Shown here piece after piece: positions 17,630-40,282 of a stretch of DNA of 41,151 nt. The notes under the pieces were generated by a model. The model had not been told where the DNA came from and did no database searches. It was given only the letters and a program-made list of their open reading frames with translations. A program made the position numbers and the translations under genes. The stretch lies in contig NC_069008.1 of the NCBI RefSeq assembly GCF_001194135.2, forward strand, positions 2,765,959-2,807,109, written 5' to 3'. The stretch's first letter is position 1, and each line of letters begins with the position of its first letter. Source of the stretch: Octopus bimaculoides (lineage: Eukaryota).

Positions 17630-17960
17630 TGTTTCAAATTTTGGCACAAAGCCAGCAATGTTAGTGGGAGTGGGTTAGCTGGTTAGGTGATTACACGGAC
17701 ATCAGTGTTCAATTTGTATTTAGTTTTTTGACGCTGAAGGACAAAATGCAAAGTTGACCTCAGCAGAATTTGAACTCAGAACATAAAGACGGAAAAAAAT
17801 GACGCCAAGCAATTTGTCCGGCATGCTGACGATTCTGCCAGTTCATCACCTGGTTTCAAATTTTGGCACAAAGCCAGCAGGTTTCAAGGAAGACCCGAGT
17901 TCATTACATCGACCCCAGTACTCAACTGGTACTTATTTTATCGACCTTGGAAAGATGATC
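17630..17960 (-). mobile_element. Two degenerate tandem SINE fragments of the family at 22800-22980 and 40831-41071
   Basis: Contain GCAAAGTTGACCTC..GAATTTGAACTCAGAAC and TACATCGACCCCAGT..CAACTGGTACTTATTT blocks. Confidence 0.6.
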
Positions 17961-18728: not shown

Positions 18729-18815
18729 CGTTTGTTCTTCTGGTGGGGGGGAGCATCATCTTGTGCGCCGAGACCCTGTTGGGTTTTATCGGCGCCCATT
18801 CATATAGAACAAACG
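18729..18815 (-). promoter_or_regulatory. SECIS element (type 2) in the SELENOP 3' UTR
   Basis: Minus strand: CGTTTGTTCT-AT-ATGA-A-TGGGCGCCGA-T-AAA-ACCC-AACA-GGGT-C-TCGGCGCACA-A-GA-TGATG...AGAACAAACG. AUGA/GA core at 18803-18800 and 18760-18759, helix II 9/10 paired, unpaired AAA, 4-bp apical ministem, 10-bp possible helix I. Confidence 0.9.
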
Positions 18816-20045
18816 GTGGGGGGGGAACTTCCTGATAACAGACGTAGCGTTGGTGGGGGGTAGCAGATGGATAGCCGTGGTGGTGACGAGGGTGATGATA
18901 GCGGAGGAGAAGGGAGAGGTAGAAAATGNNNNNNNNNNNNNNNNNNNNNNNNNNNNNNNNNNNNNNNNNNNNNNNNNNNNNNNNNNNNNNNNNNNNNNNN
19001 NNNNNNNNNNNNNNNNNNNNNNNNNNNNNNNNNNNNNNNNNNNNNNNNNNNNNNNNNNNNNNNNNNNNNNNNNNNNNNNNNNNNNNNNNNNNNNNNNNNN
19101 NNNNNNNNNNNNNNNNNNNNNNNNNNNNNNNNNNNNNNNNNNNNNNNNNNNNNNNNNNNNNNNNNNNNNNNNNNNNNNNNNNNNNNNNNNNNNNNNNNNN
19201 NNNNNNNNNNNNNNNNNNNNNNNNNNNNNNNNNNNNNNNNNNNNNNNNNNNNNNNNNNNNNNNNNNNNNNNNNNNNNNNNNNNNNNNNNNNNNNNNNNNN
19301 NNNNNNNNNNNNNNNNNNNNNNNNNNNNNNNNNNNNNNNNNNNNNNNNNNNNNNNNNNNNNNNNNNNNNNNNNNNNNNNNNNNNNNNNNNNNNNNNNNNN
19401 NNNNNNNNNNNNNNNNNNNNNNNNNNNNNNNNNNNNNNNNNNNNNNNNNNNNNNNNNNNNNNNNNNNNNNNNNNNNNNNNNNNNNNNNNNNNNNNNNNNN
19501 NNNNNNNNNNNNNNNNNNNNNNNNNNNNNNNNNNNNNNNNNNNNNNNNNNNNNNNNNNNNNNNNNNNNNNNNNNNNNNNNNNNNNNNNNNNNNNNNTAGA
19601 TATATATATATATATAGATATATATATACATATATATATATATATTTAAAGAAGATAAGAAAATAGAGAGATAAATGAATAAATAATTATCTATTAATTG
19701 TCTCTCTATTTTCGTATCTTCTTCAAATATATATAAAACCACGGTTTATCTAGTTACCTTGCAGGTGAATATTAATTATAACATTCAACACTTCTTGAAT
19801 AGGTAACTCACTAGTATTTTCATTGGATTTTGTCATCCCTTAAAGAGGTTTGTAACCTTTATTTGAACTTCTATATACATATATATATTTAATCAACTAG
19901 GTCTACTATATATTATGCATTCGTTATCATATACAGTATTCTGTACATCTACGGAATCATGGGTGATTTGTGAACAACAACAACAACAACACCAACAACA
20001 GTAGCATCAATCAGTGCAACCTTGTGCAACCTTTTCAGGAAGCGT

Positions 20046-22672
20046 CTAATCTTCGCTCATATTCGGGATGTTACTGAAGACATATTCAAAGAATTTCTGA
20101 ATCTTGCGAGCCAGCGCCTTATGTTCATTTCTCTTCCGGTCAGCAGGAGCTGGTTTTTGGCATAGCAACCTTCATCATTGCCAGGATATTGGTCAGAAGT
20201 GAGCTGGAGTTGTTCCGACTGTTGATTCCTCTAGCGCTGGTCATTGTCAGATGGTGGACCCAATGGGTGGTCAGGAAGAAGGCGTGACTGAACAGAAGGG
20301 TGGTCAGCTGGTCAGGTCTTTCTTGTTGTCTGAATCTCGCTGCTGATTGTGACTGGTGGAATTGGTCTGGAGTTGTCATAGTCATGGTCAGTCGGACATA
20401 GTGGCCACATGGACCTTTGCAGCCTGACCAACTTCTTTACCTCACTGCCATCCCGCGGACAGTCTGTGTCATTGTCAACTGGTCATCTTGACCTCCCCAT
20501 TCTGACCAACTCCCTTGGGTCATTGTCACACTGCCATACTAGGTCATTGTCAACTGGTCACCTTCACCTCTCCATTCTGACCAACTTCCTTGGATCATTG
20601 TCACACTGCCATACTAGGTCATTGTCAACTGGTCACCTTCACCTCTCCATTCTGACCAGCTCCCTTGGATCATTGTCACACTGNNNNNNNNNNTCACCTC
20701 TCCATTCTGACCAGCTCCCTTGGATCATTGTCACACTGCCATACTAGGTCATTGTCAACTGGTCATCTTGACCTCTCCATTCTGACCAGCTCCCTTGGAT
20801 CATTGTCACATGGTAACACTAGACCACTGTCAGCTTGTTGAATTGACCTTTCCTGCTTCGTCCACACCCTTAAGTCACTGTCATGCCACACCATTAGGTG
20901 TCTGTCAACTGGACAGCTCAGGCAATCCAGTCATGTCTGTTCCATTGGGTCACTGTCAGGTGGAAAGCGTCAGTCGACAGCGACGTATGTTACTGTAGCC
21001 CAAATTCTGTGAGGTTCAGAAATGAGTGGAGTTGCTGCAATTATTGGCTGTGGGTATATTGAGAACCTCTGATGTCACATTGGTCAGGCTGGTGTTGAGG
21101 AGCTCGGGTCAACATCACGTGACTCTACACTTAGTCACGTTGTTATTGCTGCTGCTGATGTTGCTGCATAGCGGCATCAGTGACAACGTTGAGCTGATTT
21201 CGTATTCCGTCTGAGATTGGTCCTTGGCACCATCTTCGTCGCAGTTTTTGTTGTTGTCGGTAGAGGCTGTGTAAGTAACATTGTTGCCATTAGAAGTGGT
21301 GGTGGATGCTGTGATGTTTCTGGTAATGTTGCTGCCGTTGTTTGCAGATGTCATGTTCTTACAGCCATCAAAATCATTGTTGTTGGTGGCGGTGGTAGTG
21401 GTGGTAGCAATAGGTGTAGCCTCGCCTTTGTCACCCTTGATGACAATGTTATTGTTATTGCGATACTGTTGCTGCTGCTGGTTGCTGGAAGACGCTGCAA
21501 TGACATCAGGTAGCTGTGCACCGGTTTCATTTCTGCATACGCAGTACATATGTTTGTAGACTGAATGCAACAAAGCACGGAGTTTACAGTTACACGGCAC
21601 CGGGAGACTTAGTACAACAGTTTCATCTCCATCAAATAACACAGGATCTGTTGTTGTTATCGGTTTTTTTTCCAACGTGTTATTCTTGTTTTTGGCAGCA
21701 GTGCTGGTACCAATATTCTTCACAGTGGCCGCGTCAACATCTGTCTTAGTGTGGTTGCGGTGACGGACACCGCTTTGGACAGTGTCTCGGAGACGGTCGT
21801 CGTGGTCTTGGATGCGATGGTTACGGTTGAGCTGACCGAGAGCTGGGGCCCGGTGGAGAAGGAAGCGACACTGTCACGTCTGAATGATTTTGTAGCGGTC
21901 CTGCTGCAGCTGTGGTGGACATTGGCAAAACGAGTCTGATGCTGTCTTTTGCTGCTGCTTCCGCTGAAGCTTCCCCTCCACTCCCTTCTCCTCTTCTTCA
22001 CCTTGTTGATGATGAGACGGAGGATAATGTTGATGGCGATGAGAATGATGCGGGTAATTGCTGTTATGATGCAACTGTTGTTGCTGATAGTGTCGATGAG
22101 GATCATTATTATTATTGTTATTATTATGAGGATGTTGATTGACGTGCTGGGAGATGTGCTGGCCATGCTGTTGATGATGAGGCGAATGTCGGTTGCCTTT
22201 GCCGTGGCTGCCCTTTCTCCGAGTTTTCTGTTCGGTGTGACAGGAACCAGTGTTGTTACCAGGCATGAAATAACACACCAGCTTCTTGAATGGCTTAACA
22301 GAATGAGACGTCGATGATGATGACGATGACGATGACGACAATGTTGATGAGAAAGAAGAAGAACCAACGGAAGCAGAAAACGGAAACAGTAGCGTATGAT
22401 GCTTGATGAGCCAGTTACTCAAGGTGGACGTTTTTGGATTGTACCTGTACACGTATTTCTTTTGCGGTTTCTTCTTTGGCAGTGACATTGCCGACACCGT
22501 GTACATGCGCCGCACTCAAGCACGGAATTTCGATGTCTGCTGGTAGTTGAATAGGTTGCCTAGCATGCAGTTGCACAAGTTGAAGTAGTACGACATGCAG
22601 ATACCTTTGTGGACGTTGAGCGTGGAAACGGGAGCCTGCGATTGGTTGAAGCGAAACGTCTGACGACCGCAC
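20046..22672 (-). CDS. SELENOP: Selenoprotein P, last coding exon (40 in-frame TGA read as Sec; terminal TAG at 20048-20046)
   Basis: Acceptor ttttacctttacgcag|G TGC GGT. (R)CGRQTFRFNQSQAPVSTLNVHKGICMSYYFNLCNC aligns with vertebrate RCGRLVYHLGLPFSFLTFPYVEEAIKIAYCEKKCGNC. No TAA/TAG in about 875 codons; His-rich region; UQU/UQUPS repeats. The frame shifts across the 10-N gap at 20684-20693, so the gap length is treated as arbitrary. Confidence 0.93.
20470..20812 (-). repeat. 75-bp coding tandem repeat (25 aa, 4 Sec per unit) inside SELENOP
   Basis: Unit TGACAATGACCTAGTATGGCAGTGTGACAATGATCCAAGGRAGYTGGTCAGAATGGAGAGGTSAAGRTGACCAGT = UQUPSMAVUQUSK(G/E)(A/V)GQNGEVK(V/M)TS; about 4.5 visible copies, interrupted by a 10-N gap. 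Confidence 0.92.
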
Positions 22673-22799: not shown

Positions 22800-22979
22800 G
22801 AAGAGATTAAGTCGATTACATCGACTGCAGTACATAACTGGTATTTATTTAATCGACCCCCGAAAGGATGAAAGGCAAAGTCGACCTCGGCGGAATTTGA
22901 TCTCAGAATGCAGCGACGGGGGTAAATACTGCTAAGTATTTCGTCCGGTGTGCTAACAATTCTGCCGGCTCGCCACCTT

Positions 22980-22980
<1 letters not shown>
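22800..22980 (-). mobile_element. tRNA-derived SINE in a SELENOP intron
   Basis: Nearly identical to 40890-41060 (AATCGACCCCGAAAGGATGAAAGGCAAAGTCGACCTCGGCGGAATTTGA). Confidence 0.8.
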
Positions 22981-23049
<69 letters not shown>

Positions 23050-23475: not shown

Positions 23476-23676
23476 CTATCGTAGAGGATGATGTCATTGT
23501 TGGAGCCTCGTAACTTCTTCCATATCCTCCGATGTAGAGAATCTTGGTAGACAGGGATACTTGTCTCCCTTCTCAGCTGATGAAGTTTACGTTTTGCTGA
23601 TGGGAAGAAAGAATTGACGATGCGGAACTTGACAAACTCCCGATTGGTTTGCAGCATGTGATGTATCTTCTCCAGC
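23476..23676 (-). CDS. SELENOP: Selenoprotein P, internal exon of the thioredoxin-like domain (201 bp, phase 2/2)
   Basis: ttccattacaccag|G...GAT AG|gtaatt. LEKIHHMLQTNREFVKFRIVNSFFPSAKRKLHQLRRETSIPVYQDSLHRRIWKKLRGSNNDIILYDR aligns with vertebrate LEDLRVKL..IVVN..HIPVYQQ..VWTLLNGSKDDFLIYDR. Confidence 0.93.
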
Positions 23677-24094
23677 CTGGTGTAATGGAACATTGGCCAA
23701 GGGTTAACAATAAATATTTTAGATATCTATCTGGGTGTATATAGTGCGTGCGTGTAACCACACATACACACACACACACACACGCACACACACACACACA
23801 CACATGCTCACATGTATGTAGAAATAATATTCTTCACCACATCAATATCGCTTTTCTGTAGGAATTAACGTTACTATCGTTTCTAAACCCAGGGCACACA
23901 TACACACATCATAAGAATTCATATACTTCAAGAAAACATGAAAATAATTTGTTTTAGCATGGAGGATCTTGAAGCAGACAAAGCTACAAATAATGTTTTC
24001 TTATGACACAATATTTGCATATATTAGGTTAACTTCTGTTGGAAACTAAGCAACAACAACAACAGCAACAATAATACAATCAAGGTTTACTCAC

Positions 24095-24346
24095 TCAACG
24101 ATGTTCTTTAATCATGGTTTTCAGTTTGCACTGAAGAGGCCAACGACAGTCGGGTGACCTGCAGTGTTGGCCATAGGATTAGCTAGCGCCCCATTGCTCC
24201 AGTTGGGCATGACTTTGCAGTTGCCATTACCCCGGTTCAGCCTTGCCGGTGACACGCCTGTCACGACGACAAGCAAGGCGAGAGTCAGTGTGATGGCCAC
24301 ATTTGAGATGGCTCCTCCTCCACCTCCTCCTCCTCCTCCTCCTCCT
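24095..24346 (-). CDS. SELENOP: Selenoprotein P, first visible coding exon (signal peptide and UxxU motif); start codon hidden in gap 24347-25119
   Basis: G11-AISNVAITLTLALLVVVTGVSPARLNRGNGNCKVMPNWSNGALANPMANTAGHPTVVGLFSAN-U-KP-U-LKNIVE, donor GA|gtgagt. Aligns with human CKQPPAWSIRDQDPMLNSNGSVTVVALLQAS-U-YL-C-ILQASK. TGA at 24123-24121 and 24114-24112. Confidence 0.92.
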
Positions 24347-25119
24347 NNNNNNNNNNNNNNNNNNNNNNNNNNNNNNNNNNNNNNNNNNNNNNNNNNNNNN
24401 NNNNNNNNNNNNNNNNNNNNNNNNNNNNNNNNNNNNNNNNNNNNNNNNNNNNNNNNNNNNNNNNNNNNNNNNNNNNNNNNNNNNNNNNNNNNNNNNNNNN
24501 NNNNNNNNNNNNNNNNNNNNNNNNNNNNNNNNNNNNNNNNNNNNNNNNNNNNNNNNNNNNNNNNNNNNNNNNNNNNNNNNNNNNNNNNNNNNNNNNNNNN
24601 NNNNNNNNNNNNNNNNNNNNNNNNNNNNNNNNNNNNNNNNNNNNNNNNNNNNNNNNNNNNNNNNNNNNNNNNNNNNNNNNNNNNNNNNNNNNNNNNNNNN
24701 NNNNNNNNNNNNNNNNNNNNNNNNNNNNNNNNNNNNNNNNNNNNNNNNNNNNNNNNNNNNNNNNNNNNNNNNNNNNNNNNNNNNNNNNNNNNNNNNNNNN
24801 NNNNNNNNNNNNNNNNNNNNNNNNNNNNNNNNNNNNNNNNNNNNNNNNNNNNNNNNNNNNNNNNNNNNNNNNNNNNNNNNNNNNNNNNNNNNNNNNNNNN
24901 NNNNNNNNNNNNNNNNNNNNNNNNNNNNNNNNNNNNNNNNNNNNNNNNNNNNNNNNNNNNNNNNNNNNNNNNNNNNNNNNNNNNNNNNNNNNNNNNNNNN
25001 NNNNNNNNNNNNNNNNNNNNNNNNNNNNNNNNNNNNNNNNNNNNNNNNNNNNNNNNNNNNNNNNNNNNNNNNNNNNNNNNNNNNNNNNNNNNNNNNNNNN
25101 NNNNNNNNNNNNNNNNNNN

Positions 25120-29821: not shown

Positions 29822-29957
29822 CAATGTTGGAACTAACTGTGGCCGGTTTTTCTTGACTATCCGTACGGCGTTCATTATGTCGACCTCCCTATCTTCCTTC
29901 AGCCGGTCACAACATATACTGATAGCGGAGAACATGCCACACCTACTGTAACCATCT
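29822..29957 (-). CDS. Receptor-type PTP, D2 signature exon (136 bp)
   Basis: ttttccag|A GAT...TTG|gtgagg; DGYSRCGMFSAISICCDRLKEDREVDIMNAVRIVKKNRPQLVPTL matches the PTP G..R.G...VD....V...R..RP motif. Confidence 0.92.
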
Positions 29958-30049
29958 CTGGAAAAAAGGAATTACAACAAAACCAAAAGAAGAAAAATTA
30001 GAAGAGCTTCAATAGCAGAGCTACTACTACTAGTATTAAATGCTAACCA

Positions 30050-32638: not shown

Positions 32639-33169
32639 CTGGTAAAGGGGAGCAACAGAAAGAGTAGGTTAATCATATTTTAAAAGCAATGACTGTGATG
32701 TATCTGTACGTCTGTCTTGGTAAGTATGTGTATGTGTGTGTTTATACATAGCTATGTATATGTGTACATATATTTTATGCATGAATGGATGAGGATAGCT
32801 GCGTGAAAAAGTGCCACACCCGAGCAGTTGAGGGAATATATATATATATAAATACATATAAATATATATATTTATATATATATATATANNNNNNNNNNNN
32901 NNNNNNNNNNNNNNNNNNNNNNNNNNNNNNNNNNNNNNNNNNNNNNNNNNNNNNNNNNNNNNNNNNNNNNNNNNNNNNNNNNNNNNNNNNNNNNNNNNNN
33001 NNNNNNNNNNNNNNNNNNNNNNNNNNNNNNNNNNNNNNNNNNNNNNNNNNNNNNNNNNNNNNNNNNNNNNNNNNNNNNNNNNNNNNNNNNNNNNNNNNNN
33101 NNNNNNNNNNNNNNNNNNNNNNNNNNNNNNAGCTATGTATATGTGTACATATATTTTATGCATGAATGG

Positions 33170-33360
33170 ATGAGGATAGCTGTGTGAAAAATTGCCACAC
33201 TCTAGCAGTTAAGGGAACCTGTGGAAGAGGTAGGCCCAGGAAAACCTGGGAAGAGGTGGTGAGGCACGACCTTCAAACATTGGGCCTCACCGAGGCGATG
33301 ACTTCTGACTGAGACCTTTGGAAATATGCTGTGTGTGAGAAGACCCGGCAAGCCAAGTGA
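33170..33360 (+). mobile_element. RTE-clade LINE 3' end; probable 3' UTR continues to about 33768
   Basis: EDSCVKNCHTLAVKGTCGRGRPRKTWEEVVRHDLQTLGLTEAMTSD*DLWKYAV..KTRQAK* is a typical RTE C-terminus (G.R.RGRP...W...V..DL....D...W). Confidence 0.8.
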
Positions 33361-34799
33361 GACCTAAATCCAAGGCCTTTGCCAGGGGTGTAGCCAGCCC
33401 ACTTATGCGTATTAGACACTAAACTTCACTTGCGAAGACCTGTTGAGGCAAGGGAAATCGAAATCGAACTAAATTCGACAACTGGCACACATGCCAATGT
33501 CGTCTTCTTCATTGGACACGAAACTCGGCTTGCGAAGACCTGTTGAGGCAGGTGAAGTCGAAATCGTAATGGCATCTGTGCCCAGCGTCGCCTTCCTGGC
33601 ACTTGTGCCAGTGGCACATGTAAAGACATTCAAGCGAGATCATTGCCAGTGCTGCTGGATTGGCTCCTGTGCATGTGGCACGTAAAATACAACATTTTGA
33701 GCATAGCCGTTGCCAGTACCGTCTGACTGGCCTTCGTGCCGGTGGCACGTAAAAGCACCCACTACACTNNNNNNNNNNNNNNNNNNNNNNNNNNNNNNNN
33801 NNNNNNNNNNNNNNNNNNNNNNNNNNNNNNNNNNNNNNNNNNNNNNNNNNNNNNNNNNNNNNNNNNNNNNNNNNNNNNNNNNNNNNNNNNNNNNNNNNNN
33901 NNNNNNNNNNNNNNNNNNNNNNNNNNNNNNNNNNNNNNNNNNNNNNNNNNNNNNNNNNNNNNNNNNNNNNNNNNNNNNNNNNNNNNNNNNNNNNNNNNNN
34001 NNNNNNNNNNNNNNNNNNNNNNNNNNNNNNNNNNNNNNNNNNNNNNNNNNNNNNNNNNNNNNNNNNNNNNNNNNNNNNNNNNNNNNNNNNNNNNNNNNNN
34101 NNNNNNNNNNNNNNNNNNNNNNNNNNNNNNNNNNNNNNNNNNNNNNNNNNNNNNNNNNNNNNNNNNNNNNNNNNNNNNNNNNNNNNNNNNNNNNNNNNNN
34201 NNNNNNNNNNNNNNNNNNNNNNNNNNNNNNNNNNNNNNNNNNNNNNNNNNNNNNNNNNNNNNNNNNNNNNNNNNNNNNNNNNNNNNNNNNNNNNNNNNNN
34301 NNNNNNNNNNNNNNNNNNNNNNNNNNTTAGTACTTAATCTATCGGTCTCTTTTTGCCGAACCGCTAAGTTACGGGGACGTAAACACACCAGCATCGGTTG
34401 TCAAGCGATGTTGGGGAGACAAACACAGACACACACATATATATATATACATATACATATATACGACGTGTTTCTTTCAGTTTCCATCTACCAAATCCAC
34501 TCACAAGGCTTTGGTCAGCCCGAAGCTATAGTAGAAGACCCTTACCCAAGGTGCCACGCAGTGGGACTGAACCCGGAACCATGTGGTTCGTAAGCAAGCT
34601 ACTTACCACACAGCCACTCCTACGCCTGGACAGCTTTGAGTAAAAACAGTGCATGTATGTATGCATACATATCCATGTTGCTGTAAGTATGCACATAGCT
34701 GTGTATCATGTGCATTGCTCAATGTGTGGAGACAAGGAATGGGGTTAATGAGCTGAGAGAAATTTAGCTAATTGTTGCTTTAATTATGCAAATTACTGG

Positions 34800-39936: not shown

Positions 39937-40282
39937 TACAACAAGCTTCTTTCAGTTTCCGTCAACCAAATCCACTCACAAGACTTTGGTCAGCCCGAGG
40001 CTATAGTAGAAGGCACCTGCCCAAGGTGCCACGCAGTGGGACTGAACCCGGAACCATGTGGTTGGTAAGCAAGCTACTTACCACACAGCCACTCGGAGAG
40101 CAGGCTGCCGTTGCTACAATCATTTCTAGCCACTGTCTAGAGATCTCCATTACTGGCTGACACATACATATGTACTAGATAAGAGAGCAAGGTGTGATGT
40201 GAGGGAGGTTTGGCTGCTGTTTCTAGAGAATCTAGTATCCACATAGAGACTCCTTCTTTTGACCTCTTGGTGGGTAGTTAGT

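What the first reader, a model, noticed from the sequence alone, without database searches (positions are those of the whole stretch)
24095..24150. N-terminal redox motif is U-K-P-U (UxxU), not the canonical UxxC
Seen: ..VVGLFSAN-TGA-AAA-CCA-TGA-LKNIVE, followed by a consensus donor, aligns without gaps to human VVALLQAS-U-YL-C-ILQASK. The resolving Cys position is therefore a second TGA (24114-24112). Established: UxxU is rare and best known from selenoprotein L, where it forms a diselenide bond. Inference: this SELENOP may have a diselenide active site with different redox chemistry. I cannot tell whether this has been reported for mollusc SELENOP.
Basis: partly seen in the sequence, partly recalled or inferred. 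Interest (0 to 1): 0.85.

Follow-up and report, generated by a model that had tools for sequence, protein, structure and literature searches.

The report
Octopus selenoprotein P UxxU redox motif
In octopus selenoprotein P the N-terminal redox site is encoded with two selenocysteines (U-K-P-U) instead of the usual selenocysteine-cysteine pair; the motif is the same in a second octopus species and derives from the ordinary form, so it is a natural variant for testing what this poorly understood site does.

Summary
The window is an Octopus bimaculoides scaffold with a SELENOP gene on the minus strand (Pfam SelP_N, E 1.4e-23). Exon 1 reads ..VVGLFSAN-TGA-AAA-CCA-TGA-LKNIVE|GTGAGT. The TGAs are at 24123-24121 and 24114-24112, on the two Cys columns of the thioredoxin-fold CxxC.

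It is not an assembly error. The independent Octopus vulgaris chromosome assembly has the same TGA AAA CCA TGA, flanked by synonymous changes. The 125 codons after the second TGA show dN/dS of about 0.05, so both TGAs must be read through.

The state is derived. Argonauta hians and the cuttlefish Acanthosepion pharaonis have U-K-S-C (TGT), as do bivalve and fish relatives. Each cephalopod carries a second Sec in this domain, at a different Cys position: the motif in Octopus, GI-U in Argonauta, and the near-invariant YDR-C-G in cuttlefish.

The gene has at least 42 in-frame TGAs (62 in O. vulgaris) and no TAA or TAG. It also has a conserved SECIS-like hairpin that Rfam misses.

A diselenide active site is the likeliest chemistry, but it is untested. 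I found no report of UxxU in SELENOP. The key survey (Baclaocos 2019) could not be read.

The parts
24095..24345 (-). SELENOP coding exon 1 (partial). It encodes a poly-Gly stretch, the hydrophobic signal-like segment ITLTLALLVVVTGVSP, CKVMPNW, beta-strand TVVGLF, and the U-K-P-U motif followed by LKNIVE.
   Evidence: Translation; 92.7% identical to O. vulgaris L002:46167-46452; Pfam SelP_N.
24347..25119 (.). Assembly gap (773 N) that hides the start codon and 5' end of exon 1.
   Evidence: N-run list. In O. vulgaris the in-frame ATG lies 48 nt upstream of the point where the window sequence begins (L002:46119).
24121..24123 (-). TGA1: Sec at the first (attacking) position of the redox motif. 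It is residue 91 in the O. vulgaris numbering.
24112..24114 (-). TGA2: a second Sec at the resolving-Cys position of the motif. It is residue 94 in the O. vulgaris numbering, and is TGT (Cys) in Argonauta and cuttlefish.
24089..24094 (-). Splice donor GTGAGT after ..GTT GA (phase 2).
   Evidence: The donor position is conserved in O. vulgaris (GTAAGT), A. hians (GTAAGT) and A. pharaonis (GTAAGA). Donor scan.
23476..23676 (-). Coding exon 2 (201 nt): (E)LEKIHHMLQTNREFVKFRIVNS...IPVYQDS...NNDIILYD(R). Acceptor caccag|G, donor AG|GTAATT.
   Evidence: Matches UniRef protein P0001 and O. vulgaris L002:47493-47693.
20046..22672 (-). Terminal coding exon. It holds the end of the Trx-like domain (CGRQTF...GICMSYYFNLCNC), a linker, a His-rich region (about 22206-22003), and a Sec-rich tail with tandem UQU repeats (about 21117-20100). 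It carries 40 in-frame TGAs and no TAA or TAG before the stop at 20048-20046. A 10-N gap at 20684-20693 sits inside the repeats.
   Evidence: The octopus cDNA contig L004 shows the exon2|exon3 junction and no intron through FRA-U-VRRMYTV into the His-rich part. The O. vulgaris orthologue has 975 codons and 60 TGAs.
22669..22671 (-). TGC, the Cys of the near-invariant YDR-C-G motif. This codon is TGA in the cuttlefish.
22597..22599 (-). TGC, the Cys of HKGI-C-MSYY. This codon is TGA (Sec) in Argonauta hians and in the octopus cDNA L004.
22516..22518 (-). Third in-frame TGA (FRA-U-VRR), just after the Trx-like domain. It is conserved in O. vulgaris, A. hians and L004.
18730..18814 (-). SECIS-like hairpin in the 3' UTR, about 1.2 kb after the stop. 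Helix I is GUUUGUUCU/AGAACAAAC, followed by the AUGA core, a helix II of about 10 bp, an AAAA bulge, a CCC/GGG mini-stem, and the 3' GA.
   Evidence: Own scan. Nearly identical in O. vulgaris, where the one stem change is C-G to U-G. Present in the cuttlefish with two compensatory pairs in helix II. 87.7% of cells are paired against at most 52% for slid controls. Not detected by Rfam.

Best explanation
The locus is the single-copy, functional selenoprotein P gene of Octopus bimaculoides.

Both TGAs of exon 1 are decoded as selenocysteine by the SECIS-dependent machinery that also reads the 40 or more downstream TGAs. The thioredoxin-fold N-terminal domain therefore carries Sec at both positions of the CxxC-type active site (U-K-P-U), where almost all other SELENOPs have UxxC.

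Shown here:
- The two TGAs are in frame and sit on the two active-site columns.
- They are conserved in a second Octopus species.
- The downstream coding sequence is under strong purifying selection.
- The ancestral cephalopod state was U-K-S-C.

Inferred:
- A single TGT-to-TGA transversion converted the resolving Cys to Sec on the lineage to Octopus, after the split from argonauts. This is one of many Cys/Sec exchanges in a gene whose mRNA already supports processive Sec insertion.
- In the oxidised protein the two Sec form an intramolecular diselenide in place of the selenenylsulfide of the UxxC forms, as in selenoprotein L.
- By analogy with engineered seleno-glutaredoxins (recalled from memory, not checked here), this should lower the redox potential and speed exchange kinetics.

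The confidence given (0.75) is for the whole statement. It is about 0.9 for 'both TGAs are translated as Sec in a functional SELENOP' and about 0.6 for the diselenide chemistry.
For: Sequence and frame.

Family: Pfam SelP_N at 83.9 bits. UniRef names the O. bimaculoides and O. vulgaris fragments as SelP N-terminal domain proteins. The gene is single copy in both loci.

Motif register:
- Gap-free alignment to CPVC, CRFC, CGFC, UPMC, USSC and UQFC in relatives.
- Alignment to ..FFATN-C-KP-C-LRELK.. of the solved Trx-like protein 2m72_A.

Not an artefact: O. vulgaris OX597841.1 has AAC TGA AAA CCA TGA TTG. The flanking changes GCA>GCC and TTA>TTG are both synonymous.

Translated through both TGAs:
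- O. bimaculoides against O. vulgaris over the N-domain gives dS 0.227 and dN 0.016.
- Downstream of TGA2 there are 15.5 synonymous and 3.5 non-synonymous differences, a dN/dS of about 0.05.

No bypass by splicing. The donor position is conserved in four genomes.

Genuine multi-Sec gene:
- 40 further TGAs and no TAA or TAG in the terminal exon.
- 60 TGAs and no TAA or TAG over 975 codons in O. vulgaris.
- An octopus cDNA contig carries the in-frame TGAs of exon 3.
- A conserved SECIS-like element with compensatory pairs.

Polarity: A. hians has TGA AAA TCA TGT. A. pharaonis has TGA AAA TCT TGT.

Precedent:
- SELENOL has two nearby Sec that can form a diselenide (PMC13134290).
- UxxU SELENOW arose by Cys-to-Sec conversion in amphioxus and Ostreococcus, and such events are reported for SELENOP (PMC7539508).
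- Bacterial Prx-like proteins occur as UxxC and UxxU (PMC9312934).
Against: - There is no cDNA, read or peptide evidence for exon 1 of either Octopus species. The one octopus cDNA contig starts downstream of the motif.
- Rfam finds no SECIS at any threshold in the window or in O. vulgaris. Only one hand-found SECIS-like element supports decoding, whereas SELENOP genes usually have two.
- The start codon lies in an assembly gap.
- Diselenide formation and any change in redox properties are untested.
- Cys/Sec swaps are common in this gene. Two of 19 Sec columns differ between the two Octopus species, and the second Sec of the N-domain sits at three different positions in three lineages. The change may therefore carry little functional meaning.
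- No coordinates of a structural model were available, so the geometry was not checked.
Confidence: 0.75

Rival explanations
1. The motif is translated as UxxU, but the Cys-to-Sec change is functionally near-neutral. It would be one of many drifting Cys/Sec exchanges tolerated because the mRNA already supports efficient multi-Sec decoding and marine selenium is plentiful. On this reading there is no new redox chemistry of biological consequence.
For: - Two further C/U differences separate O. bimaculoides from O. vulgaris in the terminal exon: DSF-C/U-QC and UQ-C/U-RF.
- The second N-domain Sec sits at a different Cys in Octopus, Argonauta and cuttlefish.
- The literature states that Cys-to-Sec events recur in multi-Sec proteins such as SELENOP (PMC7539508).
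Against: - TGA2 is retained across the O. bimaculoides / O. vulgaris divergence (dS about 0.23), although this is weak evidence for a single codon.
- Each lineage examined has exactly one extra Sec in the Trx-like domain, which hints at constraint rather than drift.
- Sec and Cys differ strongly in pKa and redox potential at active sites (established chemistry).
Confidence: 0.3
2. TGA2 is an assembly or sequencing error, or a rare allele, of a true TGT/TGC codon in O. bimaculoides.
For: The window is a low-quality draft with 20 N gaps. No reads could be inspected.
Against: The identical codon is present in an independent chromosome-scale assembly of another species.
Confidence: 0.02
3. TGA2 acts as a stop or attenuator, so that little or no full-length protein is made and the N-domain is decaying. 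Alternatively, the motif is removed by alternative splicing.
For: Two UGAs three codons apart at the least efficient (first) recoding site could lower the yield. No exon-1 cDNA is available.
Against: - dN/dS of about 0.05 downstream of TGA2.
- Intact splice sites in both species.
- 40-60 conserved downstream TGAs with no other stops.
- No usable in-phase alternative donor.
- Selenoprotein L shows that two UGAs in a UxxU motif can both be decoded (literature).
Confidence: 0.04
4. Coleoid A-to-I RNA editing recodes UGA2 to UGG (Trp), or the codon is otherwise decoded as something other than Sec, so the protein is not UxxU.
For: Coleoid cephalopods edit mRNAs extensively (general knowledge). Nothing specific was found here.
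Against: - The A of UGA has a 5' G, the context ADARs favour least (established preference).
- Trp at a CxxC position would destroy the site, yet the domain is under strong constraint.
- Editing cannot produce a Cys codon from UGA.
Confidence: 0.02

Closest known systems
Canonical SELENOP / SelenoP (vertebrates; bivalves such as Magallana gigas; Pfam SelP_N PF04592)
   Same: - Signal-like N-terminus.
- Trx-like N-domain with Sec at the first motif position.
- YDRCG and CxC motifs.
- His-rich linker.
- Sec-rich C-terminal tail of modular repeats.
- Exon boundaries ..E|LE.. and ..YDR|CG...
- A 3'-UTR SECIS-like element.

   Different: The resolving residue of the motif is Sec (UxxU) instead of Cys (UxxC). 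Only one SECIS-like element was found, and Rfam does not recognise it.
Selenoprotein L (SELENOL), a UxxU diselenide protein of fish and aquatic invertebrates
   Same: Two Sec separated by two residues at the CxxC-type site of a thioredoxin-superfamily fold. Both must be decoded from closely spaced UGAs. The expected oxidised form is an intramolecular diselenide (PMC13134290).
   Different: - No sequence homology: Pfam reports only SelP_N at E<=1. SELENOL is peroxiredoxin-like.
- SELENOL has only these two Sec. Here they are the first two of 42-62.
Lamprey SELENOP2 with a CXXU motif (PMC13134290, 2026)
   Same: A SELENOP with Sec at the second, normally Cys, position of the N-terminal motif, combined with an extreme Sec-rich tail (139-162 UGAs).
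   Different: The lamprey protein has Cys at the first position (CxxU). Octopus keeps Sec at both. The two origins are independent (vertebrate against cephalopod).
UxxU variants of SELENOW (amphioxus, Ostreococcus) and bacterial Prx-like UxxC/UxxU oxidoreductases
   Same: The same kind of event: Cys-to-Sec conversion of the partner Cys in a Trx-fold redox motif of an existing selenoprotein (PMC7539508; PMC9312934).
   Different: Different protein families. SELENOW is ancestrally CxxU, so there it was the first position that changed.
Other cephalopod SELENOPs (Argonauta hians, Acanthosepion pharaonis, an unidentified octopus cDNA)
   Same: Orthologous genes with the same exon structure. Each complete N-domain has Sec at the first motif position plus one more Sec. 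The cDNA contig starts after the motif, so only its GI-U Sec is seen.
   Different: The extra Sec is at GI-U (Argonauta and the octopus cDNA) or YDR-U-G (cuttlefish), with UxxC in the motif. Octopus has Cys at both of those positions and UxxU in the motif.

Membership tests
SELENOP (selenoprotein P) | SelP_N (PF04592) thioredoxin-like N-terminal domain | tested here: met
   83.9 bits against the curated cut-off of 23.2, E 1.4e-23, profile positions 4-164 of 234. The database fragment P0001 is annotated PF04592.
SELENOP (selenoprotein P) | Sec (in-frame UGA) at the first position of the N-terminal redox motif | tested here: met
   TGA at 24123-24121 aligns with U/C of [U/C]xxC in relatives.
SELENOP (selenoprotein P) | Cys at the fourth motif position (canonical UxxC) | tested here: not met
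   TGA at 24114-24112, and the same in O. vulgaris. This is the variant feature. UxxC is typical of the family but not defining: CxxC, CxxU and UxxS forms exist.
SELENOP (selenoprotein P) | Multiple in-frame UGAs in a C-terminal Sec-rich domain, preceded by a His-rich region | tested here: met
   40 TGAs and no TAA or TAG in the terminal exon, and a His-rich segment at about 22206-22003. 60 TGAs in O. vulgaris.
SELENOP (selenoprotein P) | SECIS element(s) in the 3' UTR | tested here: inconclusive
   No Rfam SECIS hit, even at E<=10. One hand-identified type-2-like SECIS at 18814-18730 is conserved in O. vulgaris and the cuttlefish, with compensatory pairs. No second element was found. A 668-N gap lies in the 3' UTR.
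SELENOP (selenoprotein P) | N-terminal signal peptide (secreted protein) | tested here: inconclusive
   A hydrophobic stretch ITLTLALLVVVTGVSP is present, but the start codon is in a gap. O. vulgaris has an ATG followed by a 26-residue Gly-rich extension before it. No signal-peptide predictor was available.
SELENOL (selenoprotein L) | UxxU motif | tested here: met
   U-K-P-U.
SELENOL (selenoprotein L) | Homology to the peroxiredoxin-like SELENOL / AhpC-TSA fold family | tested here: not met
   The Pfam scan at E<=1 returns only SelP_N. This gene is therefore not a SELENOL member, only an analogue at the level of the motif.
SELENOL (selenoprotein L) | Intramolecular diselenide bond demonstrated | not testable with these tools
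   This needs protein chemistry or mass spectrometry.
Thioredoxin-fold CxxC oxidoreductases (TlpA/redoxin-like) | Two redox residues spaced CxxC, directly after a hydrophobic beta-strand and at the start of a helix | tested here: met
   phmmer aligns GHPTVVGLFSAN-[U]-KP-[U]-LKNIVELEKIHH to GKPMIISFFATN-C-KP-C-LRELKAIQEVY of 2m72_A, E 0.0017.

The most novel reading that the evidence does not exclude
Cephalopod SELENOPs may use a two-selenium redox centre in the N-terminal domain. The partner of the active-site Sec would have moved between three or more Cys positions during evolution: the resolving position in Octopus, the GI-x helix position in argonauts and another octopus, and the near-invariant YDR-C-G turn in cuttlefish.

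If so, Octopus has a true diselenide CxxC-type active site, the first in a SELENOP. The natural variants would also mark which Cys residues of the domain are redox partners of Sec1, and so point to the still unknown catalytic cycle of the SELENOP N-domain.
Probability: 0.3. Interest if true: 0.75.

Novelty: new variant of a known kind. Interest (0 to 1): 0.55.

Why it matters
The enzymatic role of the SELENOP N-terminal UxxC domain is still unclear, and UxxC is treated as its hallmark. A 2026 survey called a lamprey CxxU "unique" (PMC13134290).

A naturally fixed UxxU form, with close relatives that are UxxC, gives a matched set for measuring what the second chalcogen does: redox potential, peroxidase or reductase activity, and resistance to over-oxidation.

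It is also a case of two adjacent UGAs at the first, rate-limiting recoding site of a 40-60-UGA mRNA. That bears on models of processive Sec insertion.

In practice it explains why public annotations of octopus, argonaut and cuttlefish SELENOP are fragments that begin or end at these codons.

Tried and rejected
Searches that gave nothing useful:
- Rfam SECIS detection in the window and in O. vulgaris, at gathering and at E<=10, gave nothing but simple-repeat miRNA look-alikes. I replaced it with my own pattern scan plus a comparative check.
- Exact-protein look-ups of P0001 and of two window ORFs found no contigs. There is therefore no independent O. bimaculoides DNA or cDNA.
- Three word-indexed protein searches found only O. 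bimaculoides/O. vulgaris, A. hians, A. pharaonis and one Logan octopus contig. Cephalopod sampling in these collections is exhausted.
- The octopus cDNA contig L004 starts after the motif, so its UxxC or UxxU state is unknown.
Distances between the four Cys/Sec positions could not be measured.
- The PDB holds no SELENOP structure.
- Baclaocos et al. 2019 (PMC6885538) and Shchedrina et al. 2007 (PMC1955791) are not held. Full-text searches for UxxU with SELENOP, or for cephalopod selenoproteins, found no report.

Explanations considered and rejected:
- Assembly error.
- An upstream alternative donor.
- A second paralogue.
- SELENOL membership.

Full report
**What is in the sequence.**
On the minus strand, 24150-24095 reads ACT GTC GTT GGC CTC TTC AGT GCA AAC TGA AAA CCA TGA TTA AAG AAC ATC GTT GA|GTGAGT.

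The window is a poor draft with 20 runs of N. One of them, 24347-25119, removes the start of exon 1.

A database fragment that is 100% identical identifies the source as Octopus bimaculoides. It is annotated "Selenoprotein P N-terminal domain-containing protein" (UniRef A0A0L8G0Z9). That public model starts at the first Met after the motif and ends at the next TGA, so it is an annotation casualty of the Sec codons.

**Gene model.**
- Exon 1 is ..24345-24095.
- Exon 2 is 23676-23476, with acceptor caccag|G and donor AG|GTAATT.
- The terminal exon starts at 22672 (ttacgcag|G).

Spliced together, with U written as C, the N-domain matches Pfam SelP_N at 83.9 bits against a cut-off of 23.2.

The terminal exon stays open from 22672 to the stop at 20048-20046. 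It has 40 in-frame TGAs and no TAA or TAG. It encodes a His-rich segment and a tandem-repeat tail (..UQUSKGAGQNGEVKVTSUQUPSMAV..), interrupted by a 10-N gap. The window copy therefore has at least 42 UGAs.

A Logan contig from an octopus metatranscriptome (SRR3401912) is a spliced cDNA. It shows the YDR|CGR junction and uninterrupted coding through FRA-U-VRRMYTV into the His-rich part.

**Is the second TGA real?**
The orthologous locus of Octopus vulgaris (OX597841.1, a chromosome-scale assembly) is 92.7% identical over exon 1. It reads AAC TGA AAA CCA TGA TTG AAG AAC ATC GTT GA|GTAAGT. Both TGAs are kept, and the nearest differences (GCA>GCC, TTA>TTG) are synonymous.

O. vulgaris also supplies the missing start, ATG at L002:46119. 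That puts the two Sec at residues 91 and 94.

Nei-Gojobori counts for O. bimaculoides against O. vulgaris:
- Over the N-domain, dS is 0.227 and dN is 0.016.
- For the 125 codons downstream of TGA2, there are 15.5 synonymous and 3.5 non-synonymous differences, a dN/dS of about 0.05.

This sequence can only be under protein-level constraint if ribosomes read through both TGAs.

There is no GT between the two TGAs. The only other in-phase GT upstream (24254, 4 of 9 matches) would delete the conserved N-terminus. The gene is single copy in both loci.

**Register of the motif.**
A HMMER scan of 1.84 billion representative proteins with the post-motif fragment returned 109 SelP_N relatives. In several of them a code-4 gene caller translated TGA as W, which conveniently shows the Sec positions.

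Aligned without gaps, the motif column reads:
- CPVC, CEHC, CRFC and CGFC.
- U(W)PMC in two bivalve-type proteins.
- U(W)SSC and U(W)QFC.
- Two exceptions, U(W)NIS and EPFC.

No other sequence has U at the fourth position.

No SELENOP structure has been solved. The best PDB match, the thioredoxin-like protein 2m72_A, aligns its ..FFATN-C-KP-C-LRELK.. onto ..LFSAN-U-KP-U-LKNIV.. (E 0.0017).

**Polarity and context in cephalopods.**
- Argonauta hians (BAAFZT010000055.1) has TAC TGA AAA TCA TGT ATG, which is U-K-S-C.
- The cuttlefish Acanthosepion pharaonis has AAC TGA AAA TCT TGT TTG, also U-K-S-C.

UxxC is therefore ancestral. Octopus acquired TGT>TGA after the split from argonauts.

Unexpectedly, each of these relatives has its own second Sec elsewhere in the domain:
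- Argonauta and the octopus cDNA have QKGI-U-MTYY, where Octopus has GI-C.
- The cuttlefish has YDR-U-GQQ at the Cys that is at least 90% conserved across the family.

Within Octopus, two further Cys/Sec differences separate the two species in the terminal exon. Cys/Sec exchange is thus frequent in this gene, yet every complete N-domain examined has exactly two Sec.

**Decoding signal.**
Rfam reports no SECIS in the window or in O. vulgaris at any threshold. A pattern scan found one candidate at 18814-18730. Its features are:
- Helix I, GUUUGUUCU/AGAACAAAC.
- The AUGA core.
- A helix II of about 10 bp.
- An AAAA bulge.
- A CCC/GGG mini-stem.
- The 3' GA.

It is an island of near-identity between the two Octopus species. 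The single stem change is C-G to U-G. The element recurs downstream of the cuttlefish gene with two compensatory pairs in helix II. In total 87.7% of cells pair, against at most 52% when the partners are slid. With three sequences this is supportive, not conclusive.

**Mechanism.**
Shown:
- Two in-frame, conserved, translated UGAs sit on the two CxxC columns of a functional SELENOP.

Inferred:
- Both are Sec.
- The oxidised site is a diselenide rather than a selenenylsulfide, as in selenoprotein L (cited via PMC13134290).
- The site is more reducing and kinetically faster than UxxC, by analogy with engineered seleno-glutaredoxins (my recollection, not checked here).

The main rival is not that the motif is unreal. 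It is that the swap is nearly neutral in a gene where Sec codons cost little (PMC7539508).

**Novelty.**
UxxU is known in three settings:
- SELENOL.
- A few SELENOW proteins.
- Bacterial Prx-like proteins.

Cys-to-Sec conversion in SELENOP is known in general. A 2026 survey calls a lamprey SELENOP2 CxxU motif "unique" against the typical UxxC.

I found no report of UxxU in any SELENOP, or of cephalopod SELENOP at all. However, the metazoan survey most likely to contain one (Baclaocos et al. 2019) could not be read.

I therefore rate this a new variant of a known kind, of moderate interest. The lineage-specific relocation of the second Sec is the more intriguing lead.

Noticed in passing
L001:12656-12658 (A. 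hians); L003:37452-37454 (A. pharaonis); L004 (octopus cDNA), codon GI-U; window 22599-22597 and 22671-22669: Each cephalopod SELENOP N-domain has a second Sec at a different Cys position. It is GI-U in Argonauta and in an unidentified octopus cDNA, YDR-U-G (a near-invariant family Cys) in the cuttlefish, and the motif's fourth position in Octopus. Octopus has Cys (TGC) at the other two positions.
   Followed up: partly
window 18730-18814 (-); L002:~52990-53075; L003:~40120-40200: A conserved type-2-like SECIS hairpin lies about 1.2 kb after the stop. All Rfam SECIS models miss it, even at E<=10. Only one such element was found, although SELENOP genes normally have two. A 668-N gap (18929-19596) lies in the 3' UTR, but the equivalent O. 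vulgaris stretch is mostly TA/TG repeats.
   Followed up: partly
window ~21930 (DSF-C-QC) and ~21870 (UQ-C-RF), compared with L002: There are two more Cys (O. bimaculoides) / Sec (O. vulgaris) differences in the terminal exon. The cDNA L004 agrees with O. vulgaris at the first and with O. bimaculoides at the second. Cys/Sec turnover between close species is high.
   Followed up: partly
window 20684-20693 and 21117-20100 (-): The Sec-rich tail is built of 25-residue tandem repeats (UQU..GQNGEVK.TSUQUPSMAV). The 10-N gap sits inside them. O. vulgaris has about 20 more UGAs here (62 in total against at least 42), so the window copy is probably collapsed.
   Followed up: partly
window 22516-22518 (-): An in-frame TGA (FRA-U-VRR) lies right after the Trx-like domain. 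It is conserved in O. vulgaris, A. hians and the octopus cDNA, and absent in the cuttlefish. It is the stop of the public gene models.
   Followed up: partly
window ~22490-22420 (-), compared with L002: O. vulgaris lacks 23 codons (AMSLPKKKPQKKYVYRYNPKTST) that are present in O. bimaculoides and in the cDNA L004. This is an in-frame indel in the linker.
   Followed up: no
L002:46119-46200; window 24345-24310 (-): The predicted protein starts with a 26-residue Gly-rich extension (GGA repeats) before the hydrophobic signal-like segment. That is unusual for a secreted protein, and an acceptor-like site lies just upstream of the ATG. In the window this region runs into the gap.
   Followed up: no
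L001:12584-13574: In the A. hians assembly the terminal-exon frame meets a TAA after 330 codons. It has only 2 TGAs and no Sec-rich tail in that frame. Possible causes are an extra intron, a frameshift or misassembly, or a truncated gene.
   Followed up: no
window ~29825-29971 (-): An isolated exon matches the C-terminal part of a protein-tyrosine-phosphatase domain (Pfam Y_phosphatase, E 6e-07). It marks a neighbouring gene on the same strand, upstream of SELENOP.
   Followed up: partly
window 33133-33390 (+), 12228-12614 (+), 22900-23000 (-), 17723-17932 (-) and others: Transposon-like ORF fragments (..GRGRPRKTWEEVVRHDL....VWVKPPKARCTSQWGRGTV..) and a short interspersed repeat (..RIVS.PD..L....SNSAEV.FAF.P..) recur in several copies, including in SELENOP intron 2. 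The two fragments submitted had no Pfam hit.
   Followed up: no
P0007, P0033, P0052, P0058, P0094: Several SELENOP proteins in the metagenome and Logan collections were called with TGA translated as Trp (code 4). They appear as full-length proteins rich in WQW. This is handy for reading Sec positions, but it is a trap for annotation. P0007 shows a U-N-I-S motif, with Ser at the resolving position.
   Followed up: no
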